Shown: positions 2,378-18,005 of the stretch, piece after piece
How the letters are laid out: every line of letters starts with the position of its first letter
How positions within the stretch are numbered: the stretch's first letter is position 1
Virus record (IMG/VR): IMGVR_UViG_3300042302_000394
Location: 143,814-207,813 of that record
DNA length: 64,000 bases
Reading direction: 5' to 3' (one strand)
Position numbers and translations under genes: made by a program
The notes under the pieces: generated by a model
What the model was told of the DNA's origin: nothing
Database searches by the model: none
What the model saw: the letters and a program-made list of their open reading frames with translations, nothing else

Positions 2378-2683
2378 TTATTTTATAAATTTTAAGATAG
2401 TGTCAGCATGTGCTGTTGCCCAACCTAATACTATCATTCCGCCGGCAAACGTATACATCCACCTGTCTTTTAATCTTTCCATGGCAGATATTTTTTTAGC
2501 CAGTTCCTCGTGCTGCTGGCAACTGGCCTGATACATAGTATCAAGTTTAACTCCTAGTTCATCACGAGTTTTATCTAGACAATCGTGCATTTCTTTTACA
2601 TCGACTTTAAGATTGTCTAATTTTTCATCTAAGTTAGTGACCTTGGTCTCTACTATACCAAGTCGCTCTACTGTTGTTGCCAT
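2378..2683 (-). CDS. Coiled-coil protein with C-terminal TM helix (holin/XhlA-like architecture)
   Basis: Heptad-rich N-terminus, hydrophobic WMYTFAGGMIVLGW near the C-terminus, AAGGAG RBS. Confidence 0.6.
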   Translation of the reverse strand: MATTVERLGIVETKVTNLDEKLDNLKVDVKEMHDCLDKTRDELGVKLDTMYQASCQQHEELAKKISAMERLKDRWMYTFAGGMIVLGWATAHADTILKFIK

Positions 2684-2721
2684 TGAGGCTCTCCTTAATT
2701 TTTAAAACTGAAACTTACTAC

Positions 2722-3147
2722 TTAGTTATTGCCTTGGATTGCCTTGATGATGGTATTTTTAGTGGCGGCGTTTTTTAACTCAAACATGGCCGTATCCATA
2801 TTTATAGTTTCTGTCAATTTTTGGATAACGGGGACTCCGTTGACATCGTCGAGTAGTGCGCCAACTTCGTTGTTTCCTTCTATGTAAGCCCCACTACGAT
2901 CTGGATAGAATCGGAATGTCCATACCCTGTGTTTGCCCTTGTATTGTGATCCAAATCCTAGATCCTTGATGTCGACTGTTTCCACAGTTGGACTAGCGTC
3001 ATAGCTGATAATAGATCTAATCTCAACACATTGTCTCAGTGTTGTAAAGTTTCGATATTGATCGTGTGCTAGAACAGATCCTTGATTGGGTCTAGCGACT
3101 TTAGTGTCTGTAATGTCTACAAGTGTTTGAATTTCGATGGTTTGCAT
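2722..3147 (-). CDS. Hypothetical late protein
   Basis: 141-aa ORF with a TAAATA box upstream. Confidence 0.75.
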   Translation of the reverse strand: MQTIEIQTLVDITDTKVARPNQGSVLAHDQYRNFTTLRQCVEIRSIISYDASPTVETVDIKDLGFGSQYKGKHRVWTFRFYPDRSGAYIEGNNEVGALLDDVNGVPVIQKLTETINMDTAMFELKNAATKNTIIKAIQGNN

Positions 3148-3180
3148 AAAGTACCTATTTAATTACAGATATTTATGTCA

Positions 3181-3208
3181 AAGAAAAAGGACGCTAAAAA
3201 ACGTCCTT
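3181..3208 (-). terminator. Rho-independent terminator
   Basis: On the minus strand AAGGACG-loop-CGTCCTT followed by a T-rich tail, just after the 3229-3633 gene. Confidence 0.65.
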
Positions 3209-3228
3209 CTCTTATCTAAGTAATTAGA

Positions 3229-3633
3229 TTATAGTGCGTAAGCAACTACGGTAGCATTTGCAAGGTTAACACCCTGGTGTGTACCAGCGGCAATAACTAG
3301 GTCTTCTAGGTGAACAGCGAAAGCTTCGCTGTTTGTACCGTCATATGTGTCAGCACCGTATGCACCGCCGATTGCTGCAACAGCAATACGTAGGCCATTA
3401 CCAGCACCGCCAGTTGCATCACCTGCACCGATAATTTCGATGCTAGCAACTTGTGCAATTGCTTCTAGAGCAACAGCAACTGGGCTGCGTGGAGCATTTG
3501 GGAATCCAACTGGGTCAGAATCGAACATTGCAGATACGTCTGCGCCGAAGTCAATTTGGAAGAACTGTAGTGTTACGCCGTTCTTGTAAAAAGGTGCTAC
3601 TACCTTTTCGTTTTTGTTTGTTAATGTTGCCAT
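3229..3633 (-). CDS. Probable abundant virion structural protein
   Basis: 134 aa, Ala/Gly-rich; strong AAGGAG RBS, 5' hairpin (about 3659-3678), TAAATA box and its own terminator. Confidence 0.6.
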   Translation of the reverse strand: MATLTNKNEKVVAPFYKNGVTLQFFQIDFGADVSAMFDSDPVGFPNAPRSPVAVALEAIAQVASIEIIGAGDATGGAGNGLRIAVAAIGGAYGADTYDGTNSEAFAVHLEDLVIAAGTHQGVNLANATVVAYAL

Positions 3634-3726
3634 TTTAATGGTCTCCTTAATCGTTTTTGAACTCCCCTATGGAGCTCGTTATGTTTTTATTTAGTCTCTT
3701 TGAAAAAAATTTACTCAAATGACTGA

Positions 3727-4026
3727 TTAATCGTCATCTTTTAGGTCACCCTCGATAACTTTTAACCCTTTAGCAGTTTCTTTACTATCACGTAACTTAC
3801 GTATACCCCTAGTAAATTTAGTAGGATCACCTGCTTTGATGCTGTTTAAGAGGCGCCGCTCTAACTCATACGCCTGCTCAGGTGGGAAATTTTCCTTAAT
3901 GATTGCTAAAAGATTAATTGCGCTATTAATGACATGAGCAGCTCTACTTTCTACAATAGCTTCGCCGTCTTTCTTAAGCGTAATTGAATTTAGTTCTTCT
4001 AATAGGCTTTTTGTGGCTCTTTTCAA
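3727..4026 (-). CDS. Hypothetical protein (probable TTG start at 4026)
   Basis: AAAGGA RBS 7 nt before the TTG; TAAATA at 4044-4049. Confidence 0.7.
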   Translation of the reverse strand: MKRATKSLLEELNSITLKKDGEAIVESRAAHVINSAINLLAIIKENFPPEQAYELERRLLNSIKAGDPTKFTRGIRKLRDSKETAKGLKVIEGDLKDDD

Positions 4027-4176
4027 GTTAGTATCCTTTGCAATATTTAGTTTCAAATAAAGTATAATAGATATTTTGGTAAAATACTATCTTGTTTTAA
4101 CTCAGTAGAAACACTAATATATAAATACAGAGTCAGTAGAAACCATGAGTCTACCCACACTTACAGAGGAAAAAAT

Positions 4177-4353
4177 ATGAAAATTATATCAGAATTTATG
4201 CTAGGACTAATGGAACGTTTAAGTGAGATGTTTCCGGGATCTAGTTATCAAAGCCGCTTAGACGCATATCTAAGCACCAAAGGCATTACCGATGCCGCAC
4301 AGTTGGAAACTTACGTCCGACAATTTAATTCTCAAAAGGAAAACTATCTATGA
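4177..4353 (+). CDS. DUF3563-like small protein, 58 aa (absent from the ORF track)
   Basis: GAGGA RBS; MKIISEFMLGLMERLSEMFPGSSYQSRLDAYLSTKGITDAAQLETYVRQFNSQKENYL; the AYL..x..D...LE...R pattern recalls betaproteobacterial DUF3563. Confidence 0.6.
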   Translation: MKIISEFMLGLMERLSEMFPGSSYQSRLDAYLSTKGITDAAQLETYVRQFNSQKENYL

Positions 4354-4472
4354 AAAAATTACTAAACATTCTATACGAAATTGGCCTAAGCATTGGTCAA
4401 GCTCGTGCTGCTTCTGCTATGGTTCGTGCAGGCATGCACAAAGAAGCACAGACATTACTGGCTGGCAAGTAA
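4350..4472 (+). CDS. Small hypothetical protein, 40 aa (absent from the ORF track)
   Basis: ATGA overlap with the upstream stop; MKKLLNILYEIGLSIGQARAASAMVRAGMHKEAQTLLAGK. Confidence 0.65.
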   Translation: MKKLLNILYEIGLSIGQARAASAMVRAGMHKEAQTLLAGK

Positions 4473-4493
4473 TATCGTATTTTGTCAGATCGC

Positions 4494-4527
4494 TTTACAC
4501 AGCGTAACAAGATCTATATAATAAATA
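4494..4527 (+). promoter_or_regulatory. Overlapping sigma70-type and late-type promoter
   Basis: TTTACA-17nt-TATAAT, with TAAATA overlapping the -10 box (TATAATAAATA). Confidence 0.6.
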
Positions 4528-4578
4528 CTTAGGCAGTAATGATACTGCTTATACAAACATACACACAAGGAGAAAAAT

Positions 4579-4833
4579 ATGTTTTCAGCATTTGCACCAT
4601 ACTTTACGCTCGAGGCACAGATCGATGCGTTTCAAACTACCAAGCGTGGTTTAACAGATAAGATCATCACTGATCCTACATTGAACAAAGCGGCACACCA
4701 ATACATCGATGCTCAGACTACATTTGCCAAGATGTTGTCTAAGAACTTCGCTGATCTTGCCAAGTATTCCGTGGATTCTTTTGCCAACAAGGCATTTCCA
4801 CAGACTAAAGAAAAAGCCACTACTAAGGCTTAA
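4579..4833 (+). CDS. Phasin-like amphipathic helical protein
   Basis: 84 aa, AAGGAG RBS, Ala/Thr/Lys-rich helical pattern (IDAFQTTK...YIDAQTTFAK) recalling phasins. Confidence 0.45.
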   Translation: MFSAFAPYFTLEAQIDAFQTTKRGLTDKIITDPTLNKAAHQYIDAQTTFAKMLSKNFADLAKYSVDSFANKAFPQTKEKATTKA

Positions 4834-4855
4834 TACACACATACAGGAAAAAAAT

Positions 4856-5125
4856 ATGACAGACTTTAATACACCAAAGCTACCAGAAGTTAAATTTAAT
4901 AAGAACGGCTACGAAATCCGTACAGACATTCTAGGCATGGCAAAAAGCCTAGTACAAGAAGATTTCCATGCTAAATTTCAAGGCTGGGAAATGACTGCTA
5001 CTCGTGACGAGAAGACTGGTCAGATCGTCAGTACTGTTGCAATGCCGACTTTTCCAGGACTAGACAAAGTTCTTGAAACAGCAGAAAAAATGTACGCATT
5101 TGTCAACGCTGGCGCCAAGAAATAA
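4856..5125 (+). CDS. Conserved phage hypothetical protein, called gene X here (89 aa)
   Basis: AGGA RBS, ATG at 4856: [26 protein letters not shown]...; second copy at 9225-9485. Confidence 0.8.
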   Translation: MTDFNTPKLPEVKFNKNGYEIRTDILGMAKSLVQEDFHAKFQGWEMTATRDEKTGQIVSTVAMPTFPGLDKVLETAEKMYAFVNAGAKK

Positions 5126-5173
5126 TTTATAATAATATTAGGGCATAGCCCATAAAATAATATACTAGAAAAT

Positions 5174-5200
5174 AAAAAAGGACCTTCGGGTCCTTTTTTT
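5174..5200. terminator. Bidirectional terminator with UUCG loop
   Basis: AAAAAAGGACC-TTCG-GGTCCTTTTTTT between convergent genes. Confidence 0.9.
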
Positions 5201-5603
5201 ATAGTGGCTTGCTTCTTAGATAGTTAGGATATCGTTTATTGAAGTTACGCATAATAACTCCTGCTATCTCATGTGCTTGATTTTCATGCGGACTACCTGT
5301 TTCACCACTAGTATCCGTTAGCTCACCTTGCTGATCTTGTTTGTAATGAACCAGCTCGTGTGCCACTGTTCTCAGTATGTCAACAGGGTGACGGTTCTTT
5401 AAGGCAACTAACAGCATATTCTCACTCGGCACGTATGCACCAAAGCTGGGCTGCTCGCCTGTATTTAGATCCGGGGCAAACTGCATCTTAGGCAACTGAT
5501 CTATTTCAAGGATCTCCATAGCTAGAGGTAGAAACTTTTGAAACATTTCCACAACGTTGGCATTTTCCTCTGCGCCTTCAACAATAAACTGACGTGCTCT
5601 CAT
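5199..5603 (-). CDS. Zincin-like metallopeptidase (HExxH)
   Basis: RTVAHELVH followed by E..A.E (PHENQAHE); N-terminus MRARQFIVE. Confidence 0.7.
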   Translation of the reverse strand: MRARQFIVEGAEENANVVEMFQKFLPLAMEILEIDQLPKMQFAPDLNTGEQPSFGAYVPSENMLLVALKNRHPVDILRTVAHELVHYKQDQQGELTDTSGETGSPHENQAHEIAGVIMRNFNKRYPNYLRSKPL

Positions 5604-5611
5604 AGCAGTAT

Positions 5612-8600
5612 TTAGCGCCGAACAAAATGATAATCACCGTCGGGTCCGTTGTTGCTAAAGATACCCAAACAGTCGAACCCTTGTGTGTCCATATATGCTA
5701 TTACATCATCTTTTAACGGGGCACCTTTATTGTATTCTACAACCTGTAGTTCTAGAATAACATGTTTCACTGTGGATAATGTTTCTACAGCACCCTTTAG
5801 CACATCTAACTCTGCACCTTGTACATCCATTTTAATCATATCTGGGGGAGGAAAGTTTTTAAGGCGGCGTACAGCATCTAGGGTCACTGTCTTTAGCCTA
5901 CGACGATGTGTTTCGTTAAAGTAGTTGACTGTTTCGGGATTTACTTCTTCGTTTTCTTTGTAATAACTGTTGCCACCCGGATGTACATCATTTTGATAGA
6001 AGTCAACTTCTTTGCCACTCTGGTCACTTAGCACACCCATATGATATTGCAAATTACGTTCTTTATATAGGAACTCGCTACTGTCCATTGCTTCAAATAC
6101 AACATACTTTGCTCGATCCCAAATACGTTGTGCTTCGTTAGTCCAGTGCAGAACACATGCACCGATATCGTATATAACCTTTGGTTCAAACCCTTCATTC
6201 TTGAGTTTGGCAAGATAATCTACATGGTTACGAGGAATCAGTCGTTGACTTCCTAACTCCCGTAAACGATCCTGTATGTTAAACGGTGTTACATCTGGGG
6301 CAGCAGTAATGGCATTATCTACATTAAAAGTAAAGCTGCCAGTATGGCTGCATAACACACTGGGATCTGCCCAAATTTTAAATCCTTTGTCCCGGGCCTT
6401 GCGACAGAAATCTACATCTTCTGAAACAGTGTTCCTATGATCGATAGCACTATAATACTTAAATTGTGGATAACCTATTTCACACATAACTTCTGCTTTG
6501 ACTAGAGCACAACCAAATCCACAGCCGGCAATTTCAACTAAAGGTCTACCCTTTAGCTTTTCATACGGCATATTGCTTACTCCGCCATTCTGATTGTGTT
6601 CATATATTTCTAAAATATGTAATCCAGGTTTACGTTGTATGTATAAACCGCTGACAACATCCTTATCGTGCGATAGCAACTTTGACAGTGTGTTAGGAGG
6701 GAAGCTAATATCACTATCTACACTGAATAGATAATCAAATCCTTTTACTACCCAGTCGGCAATCAAGTTGCGTACCTGATCAATATTGTATCCGTAAAAA
6801 TATTGGAACGTTGCTTCGTAGCCCTCGGGGATGATTAAGTCATAGATACTTTTAAAAGTTTCCGGTTCAATATTACGAGCTGTTGGAATTGCTATGAGAA
6901 TCTTTTTTTTAGATGGATTCATTTTTTTAATAATAGATTTAGCTGCTACGTTTTGTTCAATAGCATTTACTTTGTAATCGTTGAGTGGATTAACATCATT
7001 GTAATTATATACAATATCTTGTAGACATTTAACTTTACTAGGATCAGCATTTTCGATTAGTGCATAGAAAATACTGCCGTCACCGCCTGCCTTATACCAT
7101 GCACCTGTGTCATCTTGGAATAGGCTATCGTCTAGACCGTCAATTAACTGTTGTTTAAATGTGCGTAGGTGTGTGTAAGGTAAGATCCAATTAAAGTGAT
7201 GATTCCTGTATTCTTTGCTGTTCTTTACGTGCTCGGGATAAGGCTGACTAATCAATGGAATATTATCAACCATTGACCAGCAACTACCGTAGGTAAATTC
7301 TGTTGTGCCGTCATACACATTGTTATAGTAGCTGAACACAGTGTTGTCATTAACTAGACTGTCGTCACCGTCGAGTATCATTACAATAGCATTGGGATCT
7401 TGTAGACTTCTAAATGTATCTATTTGATTTTTTACTGCGCCTACGTTATTTTGATTTTCAATAACTTCAAACTTGGCTCGAATGTGTGCAGGATAGGCTG
7501 ACAGTGCAGTGTACAATGCTTCCAGTGTATTATCAGTACTTGCATCGTCTACCAAAATACATCGATAGTTGTCGTAGTCTTGTGTAGCAATACTGTTGAT
7601 GCAACGTGCAATATAATTTTTGCAATTGTAGAATGTGCTAACAACCACAATAGGTTGCTCTGTTCCCGGCTTGTAATCTTCTAATTCAACTGTATTATGA
7701 AACTTGCGATTGTAAATCTTGTGCAGTCTGTGGTTGATTTTGCTAACAGCACGATAGTCACTGCTGCTTAGATAATGTCCTGTCTTTTTATAAAAATGCT
7801 GCTTCCATTGCAGTGCTACACTGTCCCAACCCGCAATGTCTTTAACAATGTTGCAATAGTATTGTTTCTGTTGATGTAGATACGGATTACGATATGCTTC
7901 TACCGTGGTCTTGACAAACTGTTCAACCTGTGTTGGTACACTGATATCCGGAAACAGTCCATTGGGTTCAATAGCATAGTCAATTAAGTAACAAGCACCT
8001 GCCACTGCAATTTCTTCTAATGCACCAAAGCGGCAAGTTATGATAGGAGTGTTGTAGCATAAACTCTCCATTGATGAAATGCCGTAGGTTTCCGGAAACG
8101 CTGCCGGATACAGCATGAAGTTAGCAGTAGTTAGTATATCGGCAATTTCTTTCTGCGGTATAACACCTGTAAATTCTATACCTTGTGCTGCTAGCTGCGG
8201 ATCAGCAGCCATCTCGCGCCAATCTTTTTCTTGTTGATCAGGTTCTGCATTTGTGCTAAATCTATAGTAGCCGCCTATGACTTTTAGTTTAGCTTCAGGT
8301 ATATGTCGCTTGACATGTGGCCAGATCATTTTAACCAGCGGAATCATTCCTTTGGTCACTGATGCATTATAAACAAACAAATTCTTATCTTTGGCTTTGA
8401 TATCCACTTCGCGATTATAGATGCGTACACCGTTACGTGTGATGAACATCTTACGCTTTAGTACTTCGAAGTTTCGTCTGCGGCCATGATGACAGTTAGT
8501 AACATAGGTTAGGTGGAAATCGCTTAGTGTAAAGATGTCTGTAATTCTATCTGCAACAGCAAGCTCTTCGATCAAGTTATCGCCTAGACAGAATGTGTCG

Positions 8601-8980
8601 TGCATCCACAATACTCGCATTTTAGCTTTACTGATAATCCTGTCGTATAGATTCATAGACATGAATGGTACACTGCGATTATCGTTTAATCTCGGATAAT
8701 CTTTCGGATCAGTGAATGGAATAATTGTGCGACTGCTTATAACAATATCAAACTCGTGATTGTTAGCTAGATCTGTAAGTGGCCTATAAGTTACTGTGTC
8801 GTACTTGCCAGGTACTGCATGATCAATGTTACAGTTATTGAACACTGTAACATCAAATCCAATTTGTGCGAGTTCCCTACTCATTAGGATAACAGCACTT
8901 TCGCTGCCTCCTAGTCCTTGTTTGAATACCGTAGTTCCGTCGTATGGGATGCCGATAATATCTATAATAGCTAGCTTCAT
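5612..8980 (-). CDS. Four-domain enzyme: GT4-like (GT-B), GT2, second GT-A domain and FkbM-family methyltransferase
   Basis: GLGGSE and PETYGISSMES (GT4); VVVSTFYN...LVDDASTD...LDGDD (GT2); IAIPT...VDSD...GCGFGC (GT-A); YDIGAC and IKMDVQGAE (FkbM). Confidence 0.9.
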   Translation of the reverse strand: MKLAIIDIIGIPYDGTTVFKQGLGGSESAVILMSRELAQIGFDVTVFNNCNIDHAVPGKYDTVTYRPLTDLANNHEFDIVISSRTIIPFTDPKDYPRLNDNRSVPFMSMNLYDRIISKAKMRVLWMHDTFCLGDNLIEELAVADRITDIFTLSDFHLTYVTNCHHGRRRNFEVLKRKMFITRNGVRIYNREVDIKAKDKNLFVYNASVTKGMIPLVKMIWPHVKRHIPEAKLKVIGGYYRFSTNAEPDQQEKDWREMAADPQLAAQGIEFTGVIPQKEIADILTTANFMLYPAAFPETYGISSMESLCYNTPIITCRFGALEEIAVAGACYLIDYAIEPNGLFPDISVPTQVEQFVKTTVEAYRNPYLHQQKQYYCNIVKDIAGWDSVALQWKQHFYKKTGHYLSSSDYRAVSKINHRLHKIYNRKFHNTVELEDYKPGTEQPIVVVSTFYNCKNYIARCINSIATQDYDNYRCILVDDASTDNTLEALYTALSAYPAHIRAKFEVIENQNNVGAVKNQIDTFRSLQDPNAIVMILDGDDSLVNDNTVFSYYNNVYDGTTEFTYGSCWSMVDNIPLISQPYPEHVKNSKEYRNHHFNWILPYTHLRTFKQQLIDGLDDSLFQDDTGAWYKAGGDGSIFYALIENADPSKVKCLQDIVYNYNDVNPLNDYKVNAIEQNVAAKSIIKKMNPSKKKILIAIPTARNIEPETFKSIYDLIIPEGYEATFQYFYGYNIDQVRNLIADWVVKGFDYLFSVDSDISFPPNTLSKLLSHDKDVVSGLYIQRKPGLHILEIYEHNQNGGVSNMPYEKLKGRPLVEIAGCGFGCALVKAEVMCEIGYPQFKYYSAIDHRNTVSEDVDFCRKARDKGFKIWADPSVLCSHTGSFTFNVDNAITAAPDVTPFNIQDRLRELGSQRLIPRNHVDYLAKLKNEGFEPKVIYDIGACVLHWTNEAQRIWDRAKYVVFEAMDSSEFLYKERNLQYHMGVLSDQSGKEVDFYQNDVHPGGNSYYKENEEVNPETVNYFNETHRRRLKTVTLDAVRRLKNFPPPDMIKMDVQGAELDVLKGAVETLSTVKHVILELQVVEYNKGAPLKDDVIAYMDTQGFDCLGIFSNNGPDGDYHFVRR

Positions 8981-9102
8981 GCTATTAATTATACAGTATA
9001 TCTTAGTAGGGTCAATGATATTGATTTTTACTCATTGATCGGATAATGCTCGTGAAATTAATCTTTTAATAATCTAGGTAAGACTCTGTCAGTGCTGTAA
9101 AG

Positions 9103-9237
9103 TTAAGAAGTTTGGAAAGGACCTGCAGGTGCCGTGAAGTTAGCAGTGTAACGTGCTACACCATTGGTAATTCTGAAGTCACTAATGTATCCGTTCAAAT
9201 AATCACCAGCCTGGCCTCCAAAGTTTTGAAACCCCAA
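9103..9237 (-). pseudogene. Orphaned C-terminal remnant of a LamG tail-fibre gene
   Basis: Reads [43 protein letters not shown], paralogous to the end of 9578-14158 ([30 protein letters not shown]). In-frame stop at 9250-9252; no ATG or RBS. Confidence 0.85.
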
Positions 9238-9485
9238 AATTGCCAGAAGTTAAATTCAACAAAAACGGATACGAAATCCGTACAGATATCCTAGATATGG
9301 CAAAGGGACTAGTAAGCGAAGAATTTCATTCCAAATTTCAAGGTTGGGAAATGACTGCTACTCGTGACGAGAAGACTGGTCAGATCGTTACCAAAGTTGG
9401 TATGCCAGAGTTTCCAGGACTTGAAAAAGTTCTTGAGACAGCGGAAAAAATGTATAGTTTTGTCAATGCTGGTGCTAAGAAATAA
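9225..9485 (+). pseudogene. 5'-truncated second allele of gene X
   Basis: [27 protein letters not shown]...VNAGAKK*. Lacks the first codons and RBS, with an in-frame stop at 9183. The 3' UTR and terminator are also duplicated. Confidence 0.8.
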
Positions 9486-9537
9486 TTTTATAATAATAAT
9501 ATTAGGGCATAGCCCAAACATAATATAGTAAGTAATG

Positions 9538-9561
9538 AAAAAGGACCCGAAGGTCCTTTTT
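9538..9561. terminator. Bidirectional terminator
   Basis: AAAAAGGACC-CGAA-GGTCCTTTTT; same hairpin as 5174-5200 with the loop in the opposite orientation. Confidence 0.9.
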
Positions 9562-9577
9562 CTATAGTATTTCGCTG

Positions 9578-12500
9578 TTACTGAGTCAGGGAAACACCTG
9601 TAGGTGGTGTAAAGTTAGCAGTGTAACGGGCAATACCTAGGGTGATTCTAAAGTCACTAATATAACCATTGACACTATGAGCAGCACTAAAGCTACTGCC
9701 ACCTATATATATAAGACCGGTAGCAGATGCAAAATTAGTTGAATTAGAAGTAGTGGAGCCAACTTGTGTTCCGTTAACAAATAATCTCAGTGATGTGCCT
9801 GATCTGGTAGCTGCTATATGAGTCCAAGTATTTGCTACTACTGCTGTGGTCGTCACATTTAATATAACCGCGTTTCTTGCGTCAAGCTTCAGTTGGGTGG
9901 TGCTCCAATCGTAACCAAATGACACTACCGATCCTCCATCGTCAGGTCGTAAAAACGAAGAAAATGTACTAGTGTTTGCCATGTTTACCCAAAGTTCTAT
10001 AGTAAAGTCGCCTGTACCAAAATTTATAGAGGCACCGCCTATATAAGTCAAACTATCCCCATTACCGTCAAACTTCACGCTTTCTGTGCCGGTGAATTTA
10101 ACTACTGTGGTGTCAATTTTAGCATCACCCACAGTTTCATAATTGTTCATTCCCGAACTGTCATAGACACCAGCACCGGTTCCGTTGATCAATAATACAG
10201 TGTTTCTAACTGCTGTTAATGGTGTGTTTTGTGGTACGAAATTTGAGGTGTAGAGTGCGGTACCTTTGACATATCTAAAATCGCTGATGTAACCAGTAAC
10301 ACCTACTGGGTTAAAAGCAGTCCAATTGGTTGAATTAACGCCTAACCATAATCCGTTAGGTCCAGCTAAATCATATCGACTACTCAATGGTTGTGCTGCA
10401 CCAGGTGCGCTGACCGCTGTTCCTCCTACTCCATTTACATACACTTTAATAAAATTACTCGAACGAACTAGCGCAATGTGGTTCCAGCTATTAGTTGATA
10501 AAGTAGCCGACGACGGAAATAGCGCGGTATATTGTACAGAGCTCGTATTACTGCCGCCGCTGATAAAGATACTTGCGCTTTTGTTAGTAATCCAAATAAC
10601 CCGCTCACTGTTATATGCTTCTTTGTAAGTGCCGTAGTTTGCTATTGTGTAATCTGCCAAACCGCTAGTTGAGTAAACCCATAACTCCATAGTGAAGTCT
10701 TGACCGGAAGCAAAATTCATTACGGATGTGGTATTGGTCTGAGCAGAACCAATCCAATCATTGGTACCATCAAAGCGTGAACTACCGCCAAACACTTGTG
10801 GTGTATAACGTTGTCTAGTAGTGTAAGCGACGTTGAATGGTGCGAATTGGGATGGTATCGTGTTACCAACCGCAGTTATTGCAAAATTGTTTGTACTGTT
10901 ATCTATGAAAGTATTAGATTGGCAAGTCAATAAACTTGTACCTGCGATAGCAGTTAGTGGTTCAGTAGGTACTGTTATCGTAGTAGATGTAGCAGCGTAG
11001 GGAGCAGAACCAGTAGCACCATTATAAATCCTAACGTTACTAATATACCCCACATGGCCTCCGCCCCCAGCAATGATGCCAAAACCAATATATAAAGCAC
11101 TGGCACTGGTTTTTGCAGCAGTGTTCAATCCGTTGAAAGATGTTGCCCTAGTGCCATTGATGAACAAAGCCCAGTCTGCATTTGTTTTGACCAATGCCAA
11201 GTGATACCACTGACCTGCAACAGGAACGGTACTAGAAGGAAGAACGCCGATCCCCGAGCTGCCAGGTGCACCAGAAGCTCCCCAATTTATAGCAATTTGA
11301 CTAGATGCATTTAAATATATTGCCCAGTTTGAAAAAGAGACAGTATCTAATCCGCCGTTGTCAATGATAGTTCGGTTGGCACTAACAGTAGCAAAGTTTA
11401 CCCAAAGCTCGCAACTAAAAGAATCTGTGCTACCCGAAGTGATATTAAATGCAGCATTTGATGGTACAGTTAAATAATCCCCAGTACCATCAAAGTAGTT
11501 GCTATAATAAGGTGTAGGTAATGAGGTTTCTGTAAAAGGACTGAACTTTTGCACACTGACATCACCCGCCTTGGTGACGGCAAAGTTGTTGGGGCTGGCA
11601 TCGACGAGTCGATTGCGAGCACAGGTCAACAAACTTGTTCCAGCTATGGGTTGCAGTGGGGCGGTGCTTGGTGTAAAGTTAGCGGTATAAAGTGCGGTGC
11701 CTTTGACTAACCTTAAATTACTAATATAACCGGTAACATATTCAGATGTTCCGTCTGAATATGCTCCAACAGTCACTTGGCTTGCACCGTCGGTTAGTGC
11801 TCCTATTGTGCCGGTAGTTGCATCTAATACTCCGTTCACAAACAATCTAACAGTACTGCTGGATCGTGTAATTGCAACGTGATTCCATTGGTTGATGACT
11901 ACCGCAGTGGTAGTTCCTGTTACATTGGTAGCAGCCCCTGAAAATTGTAGTCGACCAGCAGCAACATATCTAAAGATCCATGCATTACCGGTACCCCATT
12001 GTGCCAATATATTATTATTTCCTGAAGTAATAGAAGTTGGATACACCCAGCATTCAAAAGTAAAGTCATTAGTGCCCAATGTGAACGCAGCGTTGTCCGG
12101 AATACTTAAATAATCGCCAGTACCATCAAAGTAGTTGCTCCATCCACCACCGTAGGGACTGAATGTTCCTTGTGTAGTATTACCATTTCTTGTTATCAAG
12201 AAATTGTTAGTGCTGTTGTCAATGAACACATTGTTGTTGACTGGTTGATTGGTTTGGCAAGTCAATAAACTTGTACCTGCGATAGCAGTTAGTGGTTCAG
12301 TAGGTACAGTTAATGTAGTTTGTGTCGGATCGTAAACTGCTGTACCTATAACAACTCTAAAATTACTAATATAACCAAAAAACATCTGTGAAGCTGCACC
12401 GCCTATAGTTGCTGGTCCTGCTACATAATTTGTGCTGACTGTACCATTGACATTACGAACACCGTTAAAAAATATACTTGTTTGGTTTGCACCTGTTCCA

Positions 12501-14158
12501 CTTCTTACAGCCACAATATGTAACCATCTATTTGTAACAAACGGACTTCCCGATGTTGCTATAGTATTGCCTACGCCGTATGTACCAATATTTAAATTTC
12601 CACCGCTATCTGTTTGTAATTGTATACCTCCGTTTGTAGTGGTACCAAATATAATAGCGTTTGTTGGTATTGATGTAGGATAAGCCCAAAACTCTATAGT
12701 AAAGGCACTAGTTCCGAGCGTCATTGATTGTGCCGTTAAAAAGTCCCCAGTACCATCAAAGTAAGTACTGCCGTATCCACTATAACTAGTATTGGGTACA
12801 AACGGATCAAACCCTGATATAGCCAAATTTCCATTTACTGTTAGTGCAAAATTGTTTGTACTGTTATCAATAAATCTATTGCTCTGACAAGTTAATAAAG
12901 TAGTACCTGCAATAGCAGTTAGTGGTACCGTAGGCGGTGTAAAGTTAGCTGTATAAACAGCAGAACCTTTGACTATTCTTACATTAGAAATATATCCGTT
13001 GAAGTCCCATCCACTGCCTGCATCTGGATTTCTACCAATGTAAAATGTACTTGCATTATCGGAGCCCGGGACAAGTGCGCCAGTAGCTGTTTGCGCTACA
13101 CCGTTTAAGTACAGTATATTTGTTGTTCCGTCGTAACACATGGCAACATGATTCCACTGGTTCAAAGGAGCAGTATTGTTTGATAGTTGACTACTGCCAG
13201 TATTAAATAACCAAGTCACTTGTTGAGATGTGTTTACATCAAGTCGCCATCTTGCGGCGCCTGATGAAATTAATTGAACTTGTTTTGAGCTTGTTTGATA
13301 AAACCAACATTCAACAGTCCACGACCCGGAGCTTAGGTTAAATGCTACATTTCCCGGATTAGATATAAAATCACCAGTACCATCAAAGAAATTACTGTAA
13401 TATCCAGGTGTATATGGACCGAAGTTATTTGGTCTAGTATCGCCAAATATAGATACTGGGAAGTTGTTTGTACTTGCATCGTCGACAAATACACTAGTTG
13501 CAGGGGAATTTGCACTAATCAATGTAGTGACATTTTTAAAGAAAGGGTCAGCGATCGTTATAGTAACAGTAAAGGCTCTGGGGCTTTCTTGTAATTCCAC
13601 ATCAATTGCTTCTATAGTAAAATTATAAAGTGTTTCAACACCCACTGCAACTAATCCAGTAATTAATCCACTGCTGGACAATGAAACACCGCTCGGTAAA
13701 CTACTACCGGCTTGAACCGCATATGTTAGTGGTGAATCTCCGGTTGTTTCTAGTTGTATAGAGATGGCAGTATTTGCCGGTTGATCGGGCAATGTACTAC
13801 CTGTTACCCAAGTAGGGTTTCCACTATAGGTTAACCCATTAACTCGTATTGCGACTCCACCATCGGGATTGACTACATACACTACATATGTACCCGCAAC
13901 CTGTGCAGGAACCTGTACATTTAGGGTAGTACTATTTACAAATGTAACTGATGTTGCGTTTGCACTGCCTAAAATAACTTGACATCCTGAAACAAACTTA
14001 GTTCCTGTGAGTTTTATGTAACCACCGGATAGTAATACAGCGGTATCATCAATAATAGCATAACTGGCATCTGTTATTTGTACGTTGGTTAACGTAGGGC
14101 CGCCCAACGCGGCTAATGTTGCAGGTTGTATGTTGTCTTGACTAATTTGAGTAGGCAT
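9578..14158 (-). CDS. Tail fibre/adhesin with IPT/TIG and Ig-like N-terminus and multiple LamG (ConA-like) domains
   Basis: About six repeats of YFDGTGD...FT.E.W...W.H.A..R...GYISN.R...YTANFTP. Confidence 0.85.
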   Translation of the reverse strand: MPTQISQDNIQPATLAALGGPTLTNVQITDASYAIIDDTAVLLSGGYIKLTGTKFVSGCQVILGSANATSVTFVNSTTLNVQVPAQVAGTYVVYVVNPDGGVAIRVNGLTYSGNPTWVTGSTLPDQPANTAISIQLETTGDSPLTYAVQAGSSLPSGVSLSSSGLITGLVAVGVETLYNFTIEAIDVELQESPRAFTVTITIADPFFKNVTTLISANSPATSVFVDDASTNNFPVSIFGDTRPNNFGPYTPGYYSNFFDGTGDFISNPGNVAFNLSSGSWTVECWFYQTSSKQVQLISSGAARWRLDVNTSQQVTWLFNTGSSQLSNNTAPLNQWNHVAMCYDGTTNILYLNGVAQTATGALVPGSDNASTFYIGRNPDAGSGWDFNGYISNVRIVKGSAVYTANFTPPTVPLTAIAGTTLLTCQSNRFIDNSTNNFALTVNGNLAISGFDPFVPNTSYSGYGSTYFDGTGDFLTAQSMTLGTSAFTIEFWAYPTSIPTNAIIFGTTTNGGIQLQTDSGGNLNIGTYGVGNTIATSGSPFVTNRWLHIVAVRSGTGANQTSIFFNGVRNVNGTVSTNYVAGPATIGGAASQMFFGYISNFRVVIGTAVYDPTQTTLTVPTEPLTAIAGTSLLTCQTNQPVNNNVFIDNSTNNFLITRNGNTTQGTFSPYGGGWSNYFDGTGDYLSIPDNAAFTLGTNDFTFECWVYPTSITSGNNNILAQWGTGNAWIFRYVAAGRLQFSGAATNVTGTTTAVVINQWNHVAITRSSSTVRLFVNGVLDATTGTIGALTDGASQVTVGAYSDGTSEYVTGYISNLRLVKGTALYTANFTPSTAPLQPIAGTSLLTCARNRLVDASPNNFAVTKAGDVSVQKFSPFTETSLPTPYYSNYFDGTGDYLTVPSNAAFNITSGSTDSFSCELWVNFATVSANRTIIDNGGLDTVSFSNWAIYLNASSQIAINWGASGAPGSSGIGVLPSSTVPVAGQWYHLALVKTNADWALFINGTRATSFNGLNTAAKTSASALYIGFGIIAGGGGHVGYISNVRIYNGATGSAPYAATSTTITVPTEPLTAIAGTSLLTCQSNTFIDNSTNNFAITAVGNTIPSQFAPFNVAYTTRQRYTPQVFGGSSRFDGTNDWIGSAQTNTTSVMNFASGQDFTMELWVYSTSGLADYTIANYGTYKEAYNSERVIWITNKSASIFISGGSNTSSVQYTALFPSSATLSTNSWNHIALVRSSNFIKVYVNGVGGTAVSAPGAAQPLSSRYDLAGPNGLWLGVNSTNWTAFNPVGVTGYISDFRYVKGTALYTSNFVPQNTPLTAVRNTVLLINGTGAGVYDSSGMNNYETVGDAKIDTTVVKFTGTESVKFDGNGDSLTYIGGASINFGTGDFTIELWVNMANTSTFSSFLRPDDGGSVVSFGYDWSTTQLKLDARNAVILNVTTTAVVANTWTHIAATRSGTSLRLFVNGTQVGSTTSNSTNFASATGLIYIGGSSFSAAHSVNGYISDFRITLGIARYTANFTPPTGVSLTQ

Positions 14159-14160
14159 AG

Positions 14161-14508
14161 TTATACTATTGTTATTCCATTCGGTTTTACTGCAACTTTT
14201 CCATTGTCAGTGGTTGTGACATAAACAATGTAATTTCCCACAGCTAGTGCAGGTACTTGAATATTTATTCTAACAGAGCTTACAAATGTAACTGTGCTGG
14301 CCAGTGCTGTACCTATCACAACATTGATGTTACTTGAAAAATTAGATCCGTTGATGATTGCAAACCCACCTGTTGTGCCTATTGTGGTTCCGCCTGTTGC
14401 AATATAAGAACCATTAGCAACCTGCACGCTGGTAATTTTAGGGCCAGATATATATATAATATCCAATGTACTGGGCTGAATATTGTTCGATGATATTTGA
14501 GTAGTCAT
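14161..14508 (-). CDS. IPT/TIG-domain virion protein, paralogous to the N-terminus of the LamG protein
   Basis: MTTQISSNNIQPSTL...VTFVSS...VPAL compared with MPTQISQDNIQPATL...VTFVNS...VPAQ. Confidence 0.7.
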   Translation of the reverse strand: MTTQISSNNIQPSTLDIIYISGPKITSVQVANGSYIATGGTTIGTTGGFAIINGSNFSSNINVVIGTALASTVTFVSSVRINIQVPALAVGNYIVYVTTTDNGKVAVKPNGITIV

Positions 14509-14918: not shown

Positions 14919-15857
14919 TTAAAATGTAATAGAGCCTGAGCCAATGAAGGAGTAGATTCTAAAACCGTTCAATAATGTAATAGTTGGACCACCAGTAGTA
15001 GATGTGGCCGCCGGGTACGCACTTGAGTATCTAAGTACCACAACTCCGGACGAACCGGCGGTACCTGTCGAACCTGTGCCACCACCACCACCGCCACCAC
15101 CCGTGTTTGCATCGCCAGCAACTGGTCTATTACCTGCGGCGGTTGGAGCGCCTTGGCCACCTGGTGAATAAGTTACAGCAGAGCCCCTAATACCATTAGA
15201 TAACCCTGCACCTCCGGCGGCCAGCACTATACCAGCACCGTTTGCGCCCACGCCGCCAGCTCCACCACCACCTGCGCCGCCGCCGCCGCTGGTGCCAGTT
15301 TCTGCTGTAGATCCACCGTTTCTACCGTAAACTCCGCCTGCACCAGCAGCGCCACTGGAGTTGGCGCCACCGCCTCCAGACCCATTTCCGGAACTATTTC
15401 CGGCACGAGTTGCAGCATAACTAGAGCCAGTACCACCGGCAGTTCCACCAAAACCTCCTCCATTGGCTGTGACAGAATACGCAACTGCTCCTGCTGTTGT
15501 AATACTGCTATTACCTCCGTTGGTTTGAGTTCTACTGGCCACGCCTCCAATTGTGCCGCCGCCGCCTACTGTGATGATATAGGTTTGGCCAATCTCAAAA
15601 TTCTGAGAAGACAATGTTAAGTATGCGCCGCCGCCGCCACCTCCGCCGCCACGTGCATTATTTGCTCCGGCACCGCCCGCTCCACCCCCTCCGACTATAA
15701 GTATATCATCAACAGGTATACGAAACAGCGGCGGCCAGGTATTAGTTTGTCTAGCCTGCATTTGCTGAGTAACATTAAAAACTCCATTTATCGCCGCTAC
15801 TGCGCTAATAGTTGGGGGTGTAGCCGATATTATTCCGCCAAGGTACCGTTTTACCAT
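14919..15857 (-). CDS. Glycine-rich domain tail-fibre protein
   Basis: LIVGGGGAGG...GGGGG...GSSGVVVLRY...YSFIGSGSITF. Confidence 0.8.
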   Translation of the reverse strand: MVKRYLGGIISATPPTISAVAAINGVFNVTQQMQARQTNTWPPLFRIPVDDILIVGGGGAGGAGANNARGGGGGGGGAYLTLSSQNFEIGQTYIITVGGGGTIGGVASRTQTNGGNSSITTAGAVAYSVTANGGGFGGTAGGTGSSYAATRAGNSSGNGSGGGGANSSGAAGAGGVYGRNGGSTAETGTSGGGGAGGGGAGGVGANGAGIVLAAGGAGLSNGIRGSAVTYSPGGQGAPTAAGNRPVAGDANTGGGGGGGGTGSTGTAGSSGVVVLRYSSAYPAATSTTGGPTITLLNGFRIYSFIGSGSITF

Positions 15858-15858
15858 G

Positions 15859-16230
15859 TTAACTTATATCCTCATAACTACAAGTAACTATCAATGAATT
15901 TCCTGTCGCCGCCGCAGCGCCTAGACTATTGTTTTCTTCTAAATAGTACTGACTAGTTTTGTCAATAACGTTCAATGTTGCTCCCGCCGGCACCGCTGCA
16001 TTACTTATAATTGCAAACGCAGCACCTCCTATGCTTGCAGTATTATACCAACTTACAGTTACATTGGTTGCTGTGGCTCCATAATTTGCCACGTTCAATG
16101 TGTTGACTTTCAAACATTTTCCACTATCTGATGGATTATTCAACACTGTAGTAGTTGATGTTGTGGTAAGACTAGTTCCGGTGGTCTTACCTGTAATTGT
16201 TGTTGCGCCGATTAAGTTTGGTGCTGTCAT
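15859..16230 (-). CDS. Small virion adaptor-like protein (MTAPNL)
   Basis: GGAGGA RBS before ATG 16230; paralogue of 17652-18005. Confidence 0.75.
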   Translation of the reverse strand: MTAPNLIGATTITGKTTGTSLTTTSTTTVLNNPSDSGKCLKVNTLNVANYGATATNVTVSWYNTASIGGAAFAIISNAAVPAGATLNVIDKTSQYYLEENNSLGAAAATGNSLIVTCSYEDIS

Positions 16231-16231
16231 A

Positions 16232-16693
16232 TTATCCTCCAAAGACTAAATTGTATCCTGCTATTGCTGCGTTGCTAGTTCCGCCGGATCCACCAGAGCC
16301 ACCAGAGCCACTAATGATTATTTCTCTTATCTGTATGGCCATATTTGTTGTAGGTGCTGTGACAAATATTAAGTTTGTGCCACTAACAGTATAATCAGTT
16401 GTGGGAAACTGCATAATACCGTTTTCAAATACAAACACACTGTTTACAGTCAATCCGTTCGTAATGGTAAAGGTTGTATTACTACCATTACCTGTGTAAT
16501 TTCTAGTTACAAAATTTATTGATGCGCTGCTGCCTTGACTACCTGTATATCCAATATCACCCTTTGAACCAGTATATCCCAATTCTCCCTGGGGTGGAAC
16601 AACTTCCCAGCCCTCGCCATTAAACTTCCATGTTCTAGTTCCTAGAGTATAGAGAGCGTCGAGGGCCGGTGATGATGGAAAATTTAATGACAT
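16232..16693 (-). CDS. Short fibre protein with GYTGS repeats
   Basis: MSLNFPSSP...W.FNG..W, GYTGS repeats, a beta-rich domain, C-terminus LVFGG. Confidence 0.75.
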   Translation of the reverse strand: MSLNFPSSPALDALYTLGTRTWKFNGEGWEVVPPQGELGYTGSKGDIGYTGSQGSSASINFVTRNYTGNGSNTTFTITNGLTVNSVFVFENGIMQFPTTDYTVSGTNLIFVTAPTTNMAIQIREIIISGSGGSGGSGGTSNAAIAGYNLVFGG

Positions 16694-16737
16694 AATATTG
16701 TATACTTATCTGTTGTTTGATAACTGATTGTTACTTT

Positions 16738-17652: not shown

Positions 17653-18005
17653 TACTGAATTTCCTCATATGAGCACACTGCCTGTAGACGAGAATTGACC
17701 CCAGCAGTCAATCTCAATGTATCACCTTCTTCTAGATAAATTGATTTATTAATTACATCTAGTGTTGCATCAGCAGGTACAACTACAGTTTTGGCAATGT
17801 GATATGCAACACTGCTTCTAAACACATCTACAGTGACGGATTCATTATTTGTACCATCCACATTACTAATGTATAATGCGCTGATTTTCAACACAGTGTT
17901 GCTGGCAGTGCTGTTGGTAACAATAGCAGTTGCGGCAGTTGTTATTGATTGAACTGCGGTTTTTGGTGTAATTGTTGTTAAACTTAATAAATTTGGTGTT
18001 GCCAT
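17652..18005 (-). CDS. Small virion adaptor-like protein (MATPNL)
   Basis: GGAGGA RBS before ATG 18005; ends YLEEGD.L...CSYEEI like 15859-16230. Confidence 0.75.
   Translation of the reverse strand: MATPNLLSLTTITPKTAVQSITTAATAIVTNSTASNTVLKISALYISNVDGTNNESVTVDVFRSSVAYHIAKTVVVPADATLDVINKSIYLEEGDTLRLTAGVNSRLQAVCSYEEIQ

What the first reader, a model, noticed from the sequence alone, without database searches (positions are those of the whole stretch)
4856..9561. Direct repeats of about 300 bp flank the four-domain glycosyltransferase: a potentially excisable or amplifiable glycosylation cassette
Seen: gene X with its 3' UTR and terminator occurs twice in direct orientation (about 4865-5200 and 9225-9561), including an identical block TGGGAAATGACTGCTACTCGTGACGAGAAGACTGGTCAGATCGT. 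Between the copies lie only the metallopeptidase, the GT4-GT2-GT-FkbM gene and a LamG remnant. Inference: homologous recombination between the copies would delete or duplicate about 4.4 kb and leave one intact gene X beside the LamG gene, giving subpopulations with and without this glycosyltransferase.
Basis: partly seen in the sequence, partly recalled or inferred. Interest (0 to 1): 0.65.

Follow-up and report, generated by a model that had tools for sequence, protein, structure and literature searches.

The report
Recombination scar flanking phage glycosyltransferase cassette
The two ~345-bp repeats around this lake jumbo phage's glycosyltransferase genes are real, but the second is a start-less copy imported from a different phage, a leftover of past gene shuffling, and every assembly examined keeps the cassette, so nothing shows it popping in and out.

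Summary
The repeat is real: 4865-5205 and 9225-9568, direct, 4360 bp apart, about 82% identical. It holds one identical 44-nt block and one identical 24-nt block. Between the copies lie only an HExxH protein gene, the 1122-aa GT4-GT2-GT-FkbM gene and a 38-codon LamG remnant.

The two copies are not a fresh duplication. Copy B has lost its ATG and first codons. It abuts the LamG remnant back to back. Its coding part is 97% identical to gene X of another phage (L181) and only 81% identical to copy A. A tree test rejects A and B as sisters (p=0.01). B's 3' UTR and terminator are of a third type, seen only where the peptidase gene follows X. So B is a chimeric scar of illegitimate joints in a hypervariable fibre/glycosylation island of a ~350-kb lake phage.

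Relatives that carry the cassette have a single X. No deletion or circle joint appears in any assembly: 8 IMG/VR records and the 24+24 longest contigs from exact-protein look-ups, including a 99.4% strain. Unitig depth is flat in four lake runs. The 44-nt block is the family consensus, so it is inherited.

Rare homologous crossover remains possible but is unshown. This is ordinary phage mosaicism, of low interest.

The parts
4579..4833 (+). up84, a small conserved gene just upstream of X_A (left flank, single copy)
   Evidence: ORF. It is 100% identical in all same-phage contigs and in L134/L086.
4856..5125 (+). Gene X copy A: intact, 89 aa, ATG start with an AGGA ribosome-binding context. X is a strongly conserved small protein of this phage family, function unknown.
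   Evidence: More than 590 IMG/VR matches. Mean column identity is 83%. No Pfam or PHROG family. The AlphaFold model is low confidence, pLDDT 62.
5126..5205 (.). 3' UTR A: small hairpin GGGCATAGCCC (5141-5151), bidirectional terminator hairpin (5175-5198, loop TTCG) and the last two codons plus stop of pep
   Evidence: MFE -22.4 kcal/mol, z -3.5. The motif occurs only at the two copies in the genome.
5199..5603 (-). pep: 134-aa HExxH (HELVH) protein, zincin-like, family not assignable
   Evidence: Translation. Only sub-threshold Pfam hits, M78/IrrE, Tox-MPTase3 and DUF6782. Atlas lead to Peptidase_M78 clusters. No PDB relative.
5612..8980 (-). 1122-aa multidomain glycosyltransferase/methyltransferase (GT4, GT2, third GT-like domain, FkbM)
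   Evidence: Pfam; PHROG. 136 relatives in IMG/VR.
8988..9015 (-). Sigma-70-like promoter match, TTGACC-16-TATAAT with TG extension. The -10 hexamer ends 7 nt before the GT ATG. Conserved in relatives.
   Evidence: 11 of 12 matches. Alignment A3: TGTATAATTAATAGC-ATG is invariant in 7 of 7 sequences and TTGAC is kept in 6 of 7.
9024..9102 (.). 79-nt spacer found only in this phage, between the conserved GT leader and the LamG remnant stop codon
   Evidence: Homology to relatives stops at about 8995-9023.
9103..9219 (-). LamG' remnant: the last ~38 codons plus stop of a LamG-repeat fibre-like gene. It sits where relatives have their giant gene, directly upstream of GT.
   Evidence: tblastn gives 71% to the C-terminus of LamG1526. 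Repeat D2. blastn hits the C-termini of the GT-adjacent giants of L131 and L135-L137. Synteny.
9211..9224 (.). Joint J1: an illegitimate junction between the LamG' coding remnant (minus strand) and X_B, which lacks its ATG and first codons (plus strand)
   Evidence: LamG homology ends at about 9210-9219 and X homology starts at 9221-9225.
9225..9476 (+). X_B coding part, a 5'-truncated xenolog of gene X. The ORF is open from TTG 9240 (81 aa) with no ATG and no ribosome-binding context.
   Evidence: 247/255 identical to X of L181 against 205/252 to X_A. Clade with L181 supported at 100/99. The AU test rejects an X_A+X_B clade, p=0.010.
9477..9568 (.). X_B 3' end, UTR B and bidirectional terminator B (9538-9561, loop CGAA, i.e. 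UUCG on the LamG transcript) plus a TAG/Leu relic of a pep 3' end. It is of the 'pep-adjacent' type, not the L181 type.
   Evidence: 83/92 to L020, 80/92 to L040, 50/92 to L181. The 24-nt UTR block occurs only where pep is adjacent, 9 of 21 contexts against 0 of 75. Fold.
9569..9577 (.). Joint J2: 9 nt between the end of repeat B and the stop codon of LamG1526
   Evidence: All homology to X_A and to relatives ends at 9562-9568.
9578..14158 (-). LamG1526: 1526-aa protein with six Laminin_G_3 domains (putative fibre or adhesin). Its sequence is found only in this phage.
   Evidence: Pfam. The IMG/VR scan found only same-phage contigs at 100% and nothing else above 38%.

Best explanation
The region is a hypervariable island of a ~350-kb lake-water jumbo phage. 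The usual gene order in the family is up84 > X > terminator < pep < GT < giant LamG/fibre gene.

In this phage the giant gene next to GT was cut off about 38 codons before its stop. It was joined, by illegitimate recombination, to a foreign piece. That piece is a gene X without its start codon, whose coding part came from an L181-like phage. Its 3' UTR and terminator came from a phage in which pep followed X. A different LamG gene (LamG1526) follows the piece after 9 nt.

The second 'copy' of X is therefore a chimeric recombination scar left by a swap of the fibre (LamG) module. It was not made by duplicating the neighbouring X_A. Because the scar brought a bidirectional terminator, pep-GT now sits between two terminators as its own transcription unit, driven by a conserved promoter-like element next to the GT start codon.

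The architecture is fixed in the population.

Shown: the repeat, both junction positions, the foreign ancestry of X_B, the single-X state of relatives, and the uniform architecture in all assemblies.
Inferred: the order and number of recombination events, that X_B is not expressed, and the promoter and terminator functions.
For: Repeat and junctions.

Synteny in relatives: X, pep, GT and a giant gene, with one X. The remnant matches the C-termini of the GT-adjacent giants.

Foreign ancestry of X_B:
- 97% identical to L181 against 81% to X_A.
- Tree clade with L181 at 100/99, and AU p=0.010 against an X_A+X_B clade.
- Shared allele motif DILDMAKGLVSEE.
- L181's record has no close GT and no pep beside X.

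Chimeric UTR: 90% to L020 against 54% to L181. The UTR block is tied to an adjacent pep.

Fixed architecture:
- IMG/VR contigs from 7 metagenome ids plus the window's own record.
- 24+24 longest contigs holding exact LamG1526 and X_A, including two NCBI assemblies.
- A 99.44% strain with the same layout.
- Only parental forms across the 44-nt block.
- One 4376-nt unitig from 4999 to 9374 without mismatch, and flat depth.

The 44-nt block is the family consensus. It is exact in L181 (kin of B) and in L029 and L035 (kin of A).
Against: - No donor with X_B directly followed by LamG1526 was found. LamG1526 has no close relative anywhere, so the event order stays a reconstruction.
- The 5-7-nt 'pep relic' at 9562-9568 is too short to prove anything on its own.
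- X_B keeps an open 81-codon frame (dN/dS 0.10 against X_A) and a possible TTG start, so it might still be made.
- Under naive nulls the identical 44-nt run is unusual: P=0.0026 by permutation, and 0.8% of comparably diverged pairs. A past conversion between the copies cannot be fully excluded.
- The metagenomes may be a time series of one lake, so the assemblies are independent but the populations may not be.
Confidence: 0.72

Rival explanations
1. One reading: the two X copies act as recombination substrates. Crossing over between them regularly deletes the 4.36-kb pep-GT segment, releases it as a circle, or duplicates it. The population would then hold phages with and without the glycosyltransferase.
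For: - The repeats are direct and about 345 bp long, with 44-nt and 24-nt identical blocks.
- The deletion product would be a complete hybrid X followed by terminator B and LamG1526, and many relatives live without pep-GT beside X.
- Patchy SNP clusters in a 99.4% strain show that homologous exchange is active in this region.
- Short flanking repeats give mini-circles in T4-type phages (PMC2839356).
Against: - No hybrid joint was found in IMG/VR.
- All assemblies have the full form.
- Depth is flat within about 20%.
- The copies are 18% diverged with at most 44 identical bases. From own knowledge of phage T4 and RecA-type systems, that is near the lower limit for efficient homologous recombination.
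- The identical blocks are inherited family consensus, not a footprint of exchange.
- Cassette-bearing relatives have a single X.
- k=31 unitigs cannot see a crossover inside a 44-nt identical block, so rare events remain untested.
Confidence: 0.1
2. In-situ tandem duplication: X plus its terminator, or a larger segment, was duplicated within this phage lineage. The copies then diverged to 82% and part of the duplicate was lost.
For: Direct orientation and matching ends of the two copies. Both UTRs carry the same 24-nt block.
Against: - The X_B coding part is 97% identical to another phage's X and 81% to X_A.
- The AU test rejects an X_A+X_B clade, p=0.010.
- dS between the copies is about 0.88, while the rest of the locus is identical among assemblies.
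- This model needs extra deletions to remove a second pep-GT.
Confidence: 0.05
3. Assembly artefact: the second copy arose by chimeric assembly of two co-occurring strains or phages that share gene X.
For: Many related phages with X homologues occur in the same samples. One search shows low-depth foreign X unitigs. De Bruijn unitigs break at the 44-nt block.
Against: - The same 6.7-kb sequence, base for base, appears in separate assemblies from 7 IMG metagenome ids, in JGI 3300042875 and in two NCBI assemblies.
- A 99.44% variant has the same layout.
- A single unitig runs from inside X_A through pep, GT and the remnant into X_B.
- The identical block is only 44 nt, shorter than ordinary reads.
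- The junctions J1 and J2 are unique sequence.
Confidence: 0.02
4. The scar is kept for a function. Terminator B, and perhaps an expressed 81-aa X_B, was selected because it insulates the LamG1526 transcript from the pep-GT unit or adds X dosage. On this view the repeat is adaptive and not neutral debris.
For: - The hairpin is a strong bidirectional terminator, with a UUCG loop on the LamG transcript strand.
- The X_B frame is intact.
- The architecture is stable across strains.
Against: - X_B has no ATG, no ribosome-binding context and no promoter match upstream.
- The intact frame is explained by recent import (97% to L181).
- Relatives manage with a 45-nt LamG-GT spacer and no terminator.
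Confidence: 0.1

Closest known systems
PeSL-mediated modular shuffling and mini-circles in T4-type phages (Arbiol et al. 2010, PMC2839356; Comeau et al. 2014, PMC4122927)
   Same: Non-essential genes in a hyperplastic region are bounded by repeated elements that contain a stem-loop terminator. Recombination between flanking elements can delete the cassette or release it as a circle.
   Different: PeSLs are short promoter plus stem-loop motifs repeated many times per genome. Here the repeat is a whole conserved gene plus terminator, present only twice and 18% diverged, and one copy is a truncated import. No circle or deletion form was found.
Morons: autonomous promoter-gene-terminator units inserted between phage genes (Juhala/Hendrix concept; own knowledge)
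   Same: pep-GT has a conserved promoter-like element at its start, ends at a terminator, and is present or absent among related phages at the same site.
   Different: This is a 4.3-kb two-gene unit in a jumbo phage, and expression was not tested. In relatives it sits directly downstream of a giant fibre-like gene and may be co-transcribed with it.
Mosaic joints from illegitimate recombination in phage genomes (Hendrix/Hatfull model; own knowledge, also mentioned in PMC3029335, which I found but did not read)
   Same: Sharp transitions of ancestry lie at or near gene borders. The joints are out of register and leave truncated gene relics (J1). The segments have different nearest relatives.
   Different: Here a joint happened to bring in a second copy of a gene that was already present, which created a direct repeat. 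Most described joints leave no repeat.
Spontaneous 9.5-kb deletion of the 'ORFanage' region in cyanophage S-PM2 (Puxty et al. 2015, PMC4503421)
   Same: It shows that a block of accessory genes can be lost spontaneously from a large myovirus and that the deletion form can take over a population.
   Different: In that case the mixed population was seen directly by PCR and read mapping. Here every data set shows only the full form.

Membership tests
Repeat-flanked excisable cassette (PeSL type) | Cassette flanked by direct repeats that contain a stem-loop | tested here: met
   345-bp direct repeats, each with a terminator hairpin.
Repeat-flanked excisable cassette (PeSL type) | The repeat is a recurrent intergenic promoter plus stem-loop motif found at many sites in the genome | tested here: not met
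   the UTR block and the hairpin occur only at the two copies within the 207.8-kb record. The repeat is mostly coding sequence.
Repeat-flanked excisable cassette (PeSL type) | Deleted or circular recombinant forms exist | tested here: inconclusive
   No hybrid was found in IMG/VR or in the 48 contigs from exact look-ups, and depth is flat. Only contigs were on hand. k=31 unitigs cannot see a crossover inside a 44-nt identical block, and the metagenome-contig scans came back empty even for the parental forms.
Repeat-flanked excisable cassette (PeSL type) | Close relatives differ by presence or absence of the cassette exactly at the repeats | tested here: not met
   Relatives with pep-GT have a single X. 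Relatives without it carry other genes after X.
In-situ tandem duplication (paralogous copies) | The two copies are each other's closest relatives | tested here: not met
   X_B is 97% identical to L181 and 81% to X_A. AU test p=0.010 against a joint clade.
Moron-like autonomous unit | Own promoter and own terminator | tested here: inconclusive
   There is a consensus promoter match, conserved in 6-7 relatives, and a predicted terminator. No transcript data are available.
Moron-like autonomous unit | Variable presence at a fixed site among related genomes | tested here: met
   pep-GT lies next to X in about 20 of about 96 distinct contexts and is absent in the rest.
Glycosyltransferase GT4 / GT2 and FkbM methyltransferase domains | Pfam domain matches above the gathering score | tested here: met
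   Glycos_transf_1 38.5 bits (cut-off 26.4), Glycos_transf_2 70.6 bits (23.3), Methyltransf_21 57.6 bits (22.7). The third GT-like domain rests only on PHROGs 1574 and 12406.
Zincin metallopeptidase (M78/IrrE-like) | HExxH motif and a family match above threshold | tested here: inconclusive
   The HELVH motif is present. All Pfam hits fall below the cut-offs, at E 0.02-0.3. There is an Atlas feature lead only and no PDB relative.
Laminin_G_3 (LamG) repeat protein | Pfam PF13385 repeats | tested here: met
   six stretches, 349.9 bits. The remnant at 9103-9219 matches the C-terminal motif at 71%.

The most novel reading that the evidence does not exclude
Rare homologous crossovers between the native X_A and the imported X_B continuously produce a minority of phages that lack pep-GT, along with 4.36-kb circles or tandem duplications. 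This would give the lake population a standing GT+/GT- polymorphism that selection can draw on, for example when glycosylation changes host recognition or defence evasion. That would amount to a repeat-driven 'glyco-switch' in a jumbo phage.
Probability: 0.07. Interest if true: 0.5.

Novelty: new member of a known kind. Interest (0 to 1): 0.2.

Why it matters
The region is a clean, datable example of how fibre and glycosylation islands of uncultured jumbo phages are rebuilt. Three ancestries meet within 350 bp, one joint lies at a start codon, and another lies at a terminator. It also shows how such joints can create direct repeats by accident.

It warns against reading a repeat-flanked cassette as mobile without population data.

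For annotation, X_B (9240-9485) is best treated as a truncated relic, and pep-GT as a terminator-insulated unit with its own conserved promoter-like element. Beyond that the finding is ordinary phage mosaicism.

Tried and rejected
- GenBank phage collection: no match by megablast, blastn or tblastn. No cultured relative was found there.
- Metagenome contigs: two exact-pattern scans returned nothing, even for the parental sequences. They say nothing about deletion forms.
- Gene conversion between the copies. I first took the identical 44-nt run as a footprint, because permutation gave P=0.0026 and only 0.8% of comparably diverged pairs share the block. I rejected this because the block is the family consensus. 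It is exact in L181 (kin of B) and in L029 and L035 (kin of A).
- 'Joint' 5022>9402 in run X13: depth 2, 7 mismatches, 19 extra letters. It comes from another phage's single X gene and is not a deletion of this phage.
- First tree, made before L181 was found: the AU test could not reject an X_A+X_B clade, p=0.148. One search supersedes it.
- Function of X: no Pfam or PHROG family. The Atlas gave only unnamed viral clusters. The AlphaFold model has pLDDT 62, too poor for a fold search.
- Single-crossover model with an 'X_B-terminator-LamG1526' donor: no such donor was found, and LamG1526 is unique to this phage.
- RecA/UvsX (PF00154) is absent from the 58%-complete record, and the Gp23 search rang nowhere. 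Neither result tells whether the phage encodes a recombinase.
- Gene call of 62 aa for X_B in L251: this is a gene-caller difference, because the DNA is identical.
- Read laying was given 5,901 letters. No alternative genetic code was used.


Full report
**Setting.** The window is the last 64 kb of a 207,813-bp linear IMG/VR virus record. CheckV rates it 58% complete, which implies a genome of roughly 350 kb. Related contigs reach 265-383 kb. The window carries collagen-like tail-fibre, baseplate, ligase and radical-SAM genes. All public runs that hold the stretch are lake or freshwater metagenomes. The GenBank phage collection has no relative by DNA or protein.

**Observation.** The direct repeat is real.
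- It spans 4865-5205 and 9225-9568, 4360-4364 bp apart, and is about 82% identical.
- It holds an exact 44-nt block (4985-5028 / 9345-9388) and an exact 24-nt block (5129-5152 / 9493-9516).
- blastn between the copies gives E about 5e-93, and there is no third copy in the record.
- Copy A is an intact 89-aa gene (4856-5125) with an AGGA-type ribosome-binding context.
- Each copy is followed by a small GGGC-ATA-GCCC hairpin and by an 11-bp A/T-flanked hairpin that scores as a terminator on both strands.
- The two terminator hairpins are exact reverse complements of one another, with loop TTCG against CGAA.
- Between the copies lie three features: a 134-aa HExxH protein gene (5199-5603), the 1122-aa gene with Glycos_transf_1, Glycos_transf_2, a third GT-like domain and an FkbM methyltransferase domain (5612-8980), and the last ~38 codons of a LamG-type gene (9103-9219).
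- The 'metallopeptidase' label rests on the motif and on sub-threshold hits only.

Copy B is not a whole gene. Homology to X begins at 9221-9225. CTC stands at 9216 where the ATG should be. The first canonical start in frame is TTG 9240, without a ribosome-binding context. The truncated X_B abuts the LamG remnant, which is coded on the other strand. The join (J1) lies within 9211-9224. At the other end all homology stops at 9562-9568, and LamG1526 (1526 aa, six Laminin_G_3 domains) ends 9 nt further on (J2).

**Comparison with relatives.** Gene X is a highly conserved small protein of a large family of lake phages. It has more than 590 IMG/VR matches and a mean column identity of 83%.
- In relatives that carry the GT, the order is up84 > X > terminator < pep < (0-3 genes) < GT < giant LamG/fibre gene < d121. 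They have one X.
- Most relatives have other genes after X and no pep-GT there.
- The LamG remnant therefore sits exactly where relatives keep their giant gene. It resembles the C-termini of the GT-adjacent giants of L131 and L135-L137.
- Only this phage has a second X.

**Ancestry of the copies.**
- The coding part of X_B (9225-9476) is 247/255 identical to gene X of another phage (L180/L181, a 228.8-kb contig) and only 205/252 identical to X_A.
- In a maximum-likelihood tree of 81 distinct X sequences, X_B and L181 form a clade with 100/99 support. The AU test rejects a tree that holds X_A and X_B together (p=0.010, lnL difference 58.5).
- An earlier tree without L181 was inconclusive (p=0.148).
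- L181 has a complete X, followed by unrelated genes. Its record holds no close GT.
- The 3' end, UTR and terminator of X_B (9477-9568) are unlike L181 (50/92). They are 87-90% identical to the UTRs of L020 and L040, phages in which pep follows X.
- The 24-nt UTR block was found in 9 of 21 distinct contexts with an adjacent pep and in 0 of 75 without.
- X_B is thus itself a chimera. Its UTR indicates that a pep gene once followed it. The TAG-Leu relic at 9562-9567 fits this but is too short to count as evidence.

**The identical 44-nt block.** Under a permutation that keeps mismatches per codon position, the run is unusual (P=0.0026). Only 0.8% of comparably diverged pairs share the block. However, the block equals the family consensus. 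It is also exact in L181 (kin of B) and in L029 and L035 (among the nearest kin of A). Inheritance explains it, and no exchange between the copies is needed.

**Population evidence.**
- IMG/VR holds contigs of this phage from seven metagenome ids, besides the window's own record. All that reach both sides have the full layout, and their 6.7-kb region is identical base for base.
- A degenerate pattern that would match any combination of A- or B-type flanks around the 44-nt block found only A-A and B-B.
- Exact-sequence look-ups list LamG1526 in 89 blocks and X_A in 140 blocks of a larger collection. All of the 24+24 longest contigs show LamG1526 - X_B - GT - pep - X_A - up84. They include a 239.9-kb JGI contig and two NCBI assemblies.
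- One contig (L253) is a 99.44% strain with the same layout. Its 43 differences cluster in patches inside pep, GT and LamG1526. None lies in the X copies or at the joints.
- In four lake runs the k=31 unitigs break at the 44-nt block, as expected. One 4376-nt unitig runs from 4999 to 9374 without a mismatch.
- Unitig depths of flanks and cassette are alike: 10.9 and 10.4, 44-46 and 42, 32-40 and 26-32, 23-25 and 21-29. Variation inside GT is as large as at the repeat borders.
- The one 'joint' listed (5022>9402; depth 2, 7 mismatches, 19 extra letters) is another phage's X.
- Limits: only contigs were available. A crossover inside a 44-nt identical block makes no new 31-mer. The two metagenome-contig scans were empty even for the parental forms. 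Minor variants below roughly 10-20% are therefore untested.

**Mechanism.** The best reading is that a swap of the fibre (LamG) module, by at least two illegitimate joints, left a start-less foreign X plus terminator between the new LamG gene and the stump of the old one. The result looks like a repeat-flanked cassette, but the repeat is a by-product.

pep-GT is nevertheless a self-contained unit. A TTGAC-N17-TGTATAAT element ends 7 nt before the GT ATG. It is invariant or nearly so in seven phages, and the unit ends at terminator A. Terminator B now also separates the unit from LamG1526. These functions are inferred from sequence and were not measured.

**Comparison with known systems.** Its defining recurrent intergenic motif is absent here, and no circle or deletion form was seen. 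The anatomy fits the moron concept and the illegitimate-recombination model of phage mosaicism, both from my own knowledge. Spontaneous loss of an accessory block has been shown directly in cyanophage S-PM2 (PMC4503421). Nothing comparable is visible here.

**Verdict.** This is a new member of a known kind, of low interest. The decisive missing test is raw-read or long-read counting of hybrid joints.

Noticed in passing
window 8981-9023 (minus strand); L017, L040, L134, L020, L064, L131 upstream of GT: A sigma-70-like element, TTGAC-N17-TGTATAAT, ends only 7 nt before the GT start codon. It is invariant or nearly so in seven phages, while the surrounding sequence is not (alignment A3). This suggests a leaderless GT message or some other conserved control element.
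   Followed up: partly
window 5175-5198 and 9538-9561: The two terminator hairpins are exact reverse complements. The stable UUCG tetraloop forms on the X_A transcript at copy A and on the LamG1526 transcript at copy B.
   Followed up: partly
X 3' UTRs in about 96 distinct IMG/VR contexts: The UTR hairpin block ATAATAATATTAGGGCATAGCCCA travels with the downstream pep gene and not with the X coding sequence: 9 of 21 contexts with an adjacent pep, 0 of 75 without. L104 is an example, 73% identical in the CDS but 89% in the UTR. The stop codon of X appears to be a recurrent recombination border.
   Followed up: partly
L253 (JGI 3300042892) against window 5328-5549, 6623-6824, 10727-10739: A 99.44% strain differs by 43 substitutions. 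They are clustered in three short patches inside pep, GT and LamG1526, which fits short-patch homologous exchange with related phages.
   Followed up: partly
L134 and L086 against window 4579-5125: up84 is 100% identical in protein and pep is 95% identical, while the X gene between them is only 80% identical. This is a further sign of gene-by-gene mosaicism at this site.
   Followed up: no
window 14161-14508 and 13829-14158 (minus strand): The 115-aa gene upstream of LamG1526 has a weak IPT/TIG match and is 44% identical to the N-terminal ~110 residues of LamG1526. This looks like a duplicated N-terminal module.
   Followed up: no
window 4156-4179, 4558-4581, 4834-4858: A shared upstream context, ACACA...AGGA(G)AAAAATATG, precedes the plus-strand small genes up58, up84 and X_A (D8). 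X_B lacks it.
   Followed up: no
genome C1:48330-48815 (outside the window): A second, distant copy of the third GT-like domain (29% identity to GT residues 730-886) lies elsewhere in the record.
   Followed up: no
L249, L250 and L251, locus coordinates 2507-5240 (the far side of LamG1526, about window 15300-18000): Assemblies with identical LamG1526 differ in their gene calls there: 304 aa against 90+100 aa, and 312 against 280 against 107+110 aa. This may reflect frameshift variants or differences between gene callers.
   Followed up: no
L085 (IMGVR 3300046001_003542) end, at window 9115: One short assembly of this phage stops inside the LamG remnant, probably because the LamG C-terminal motif is repeated 475 bp further on.
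   Followed up: no
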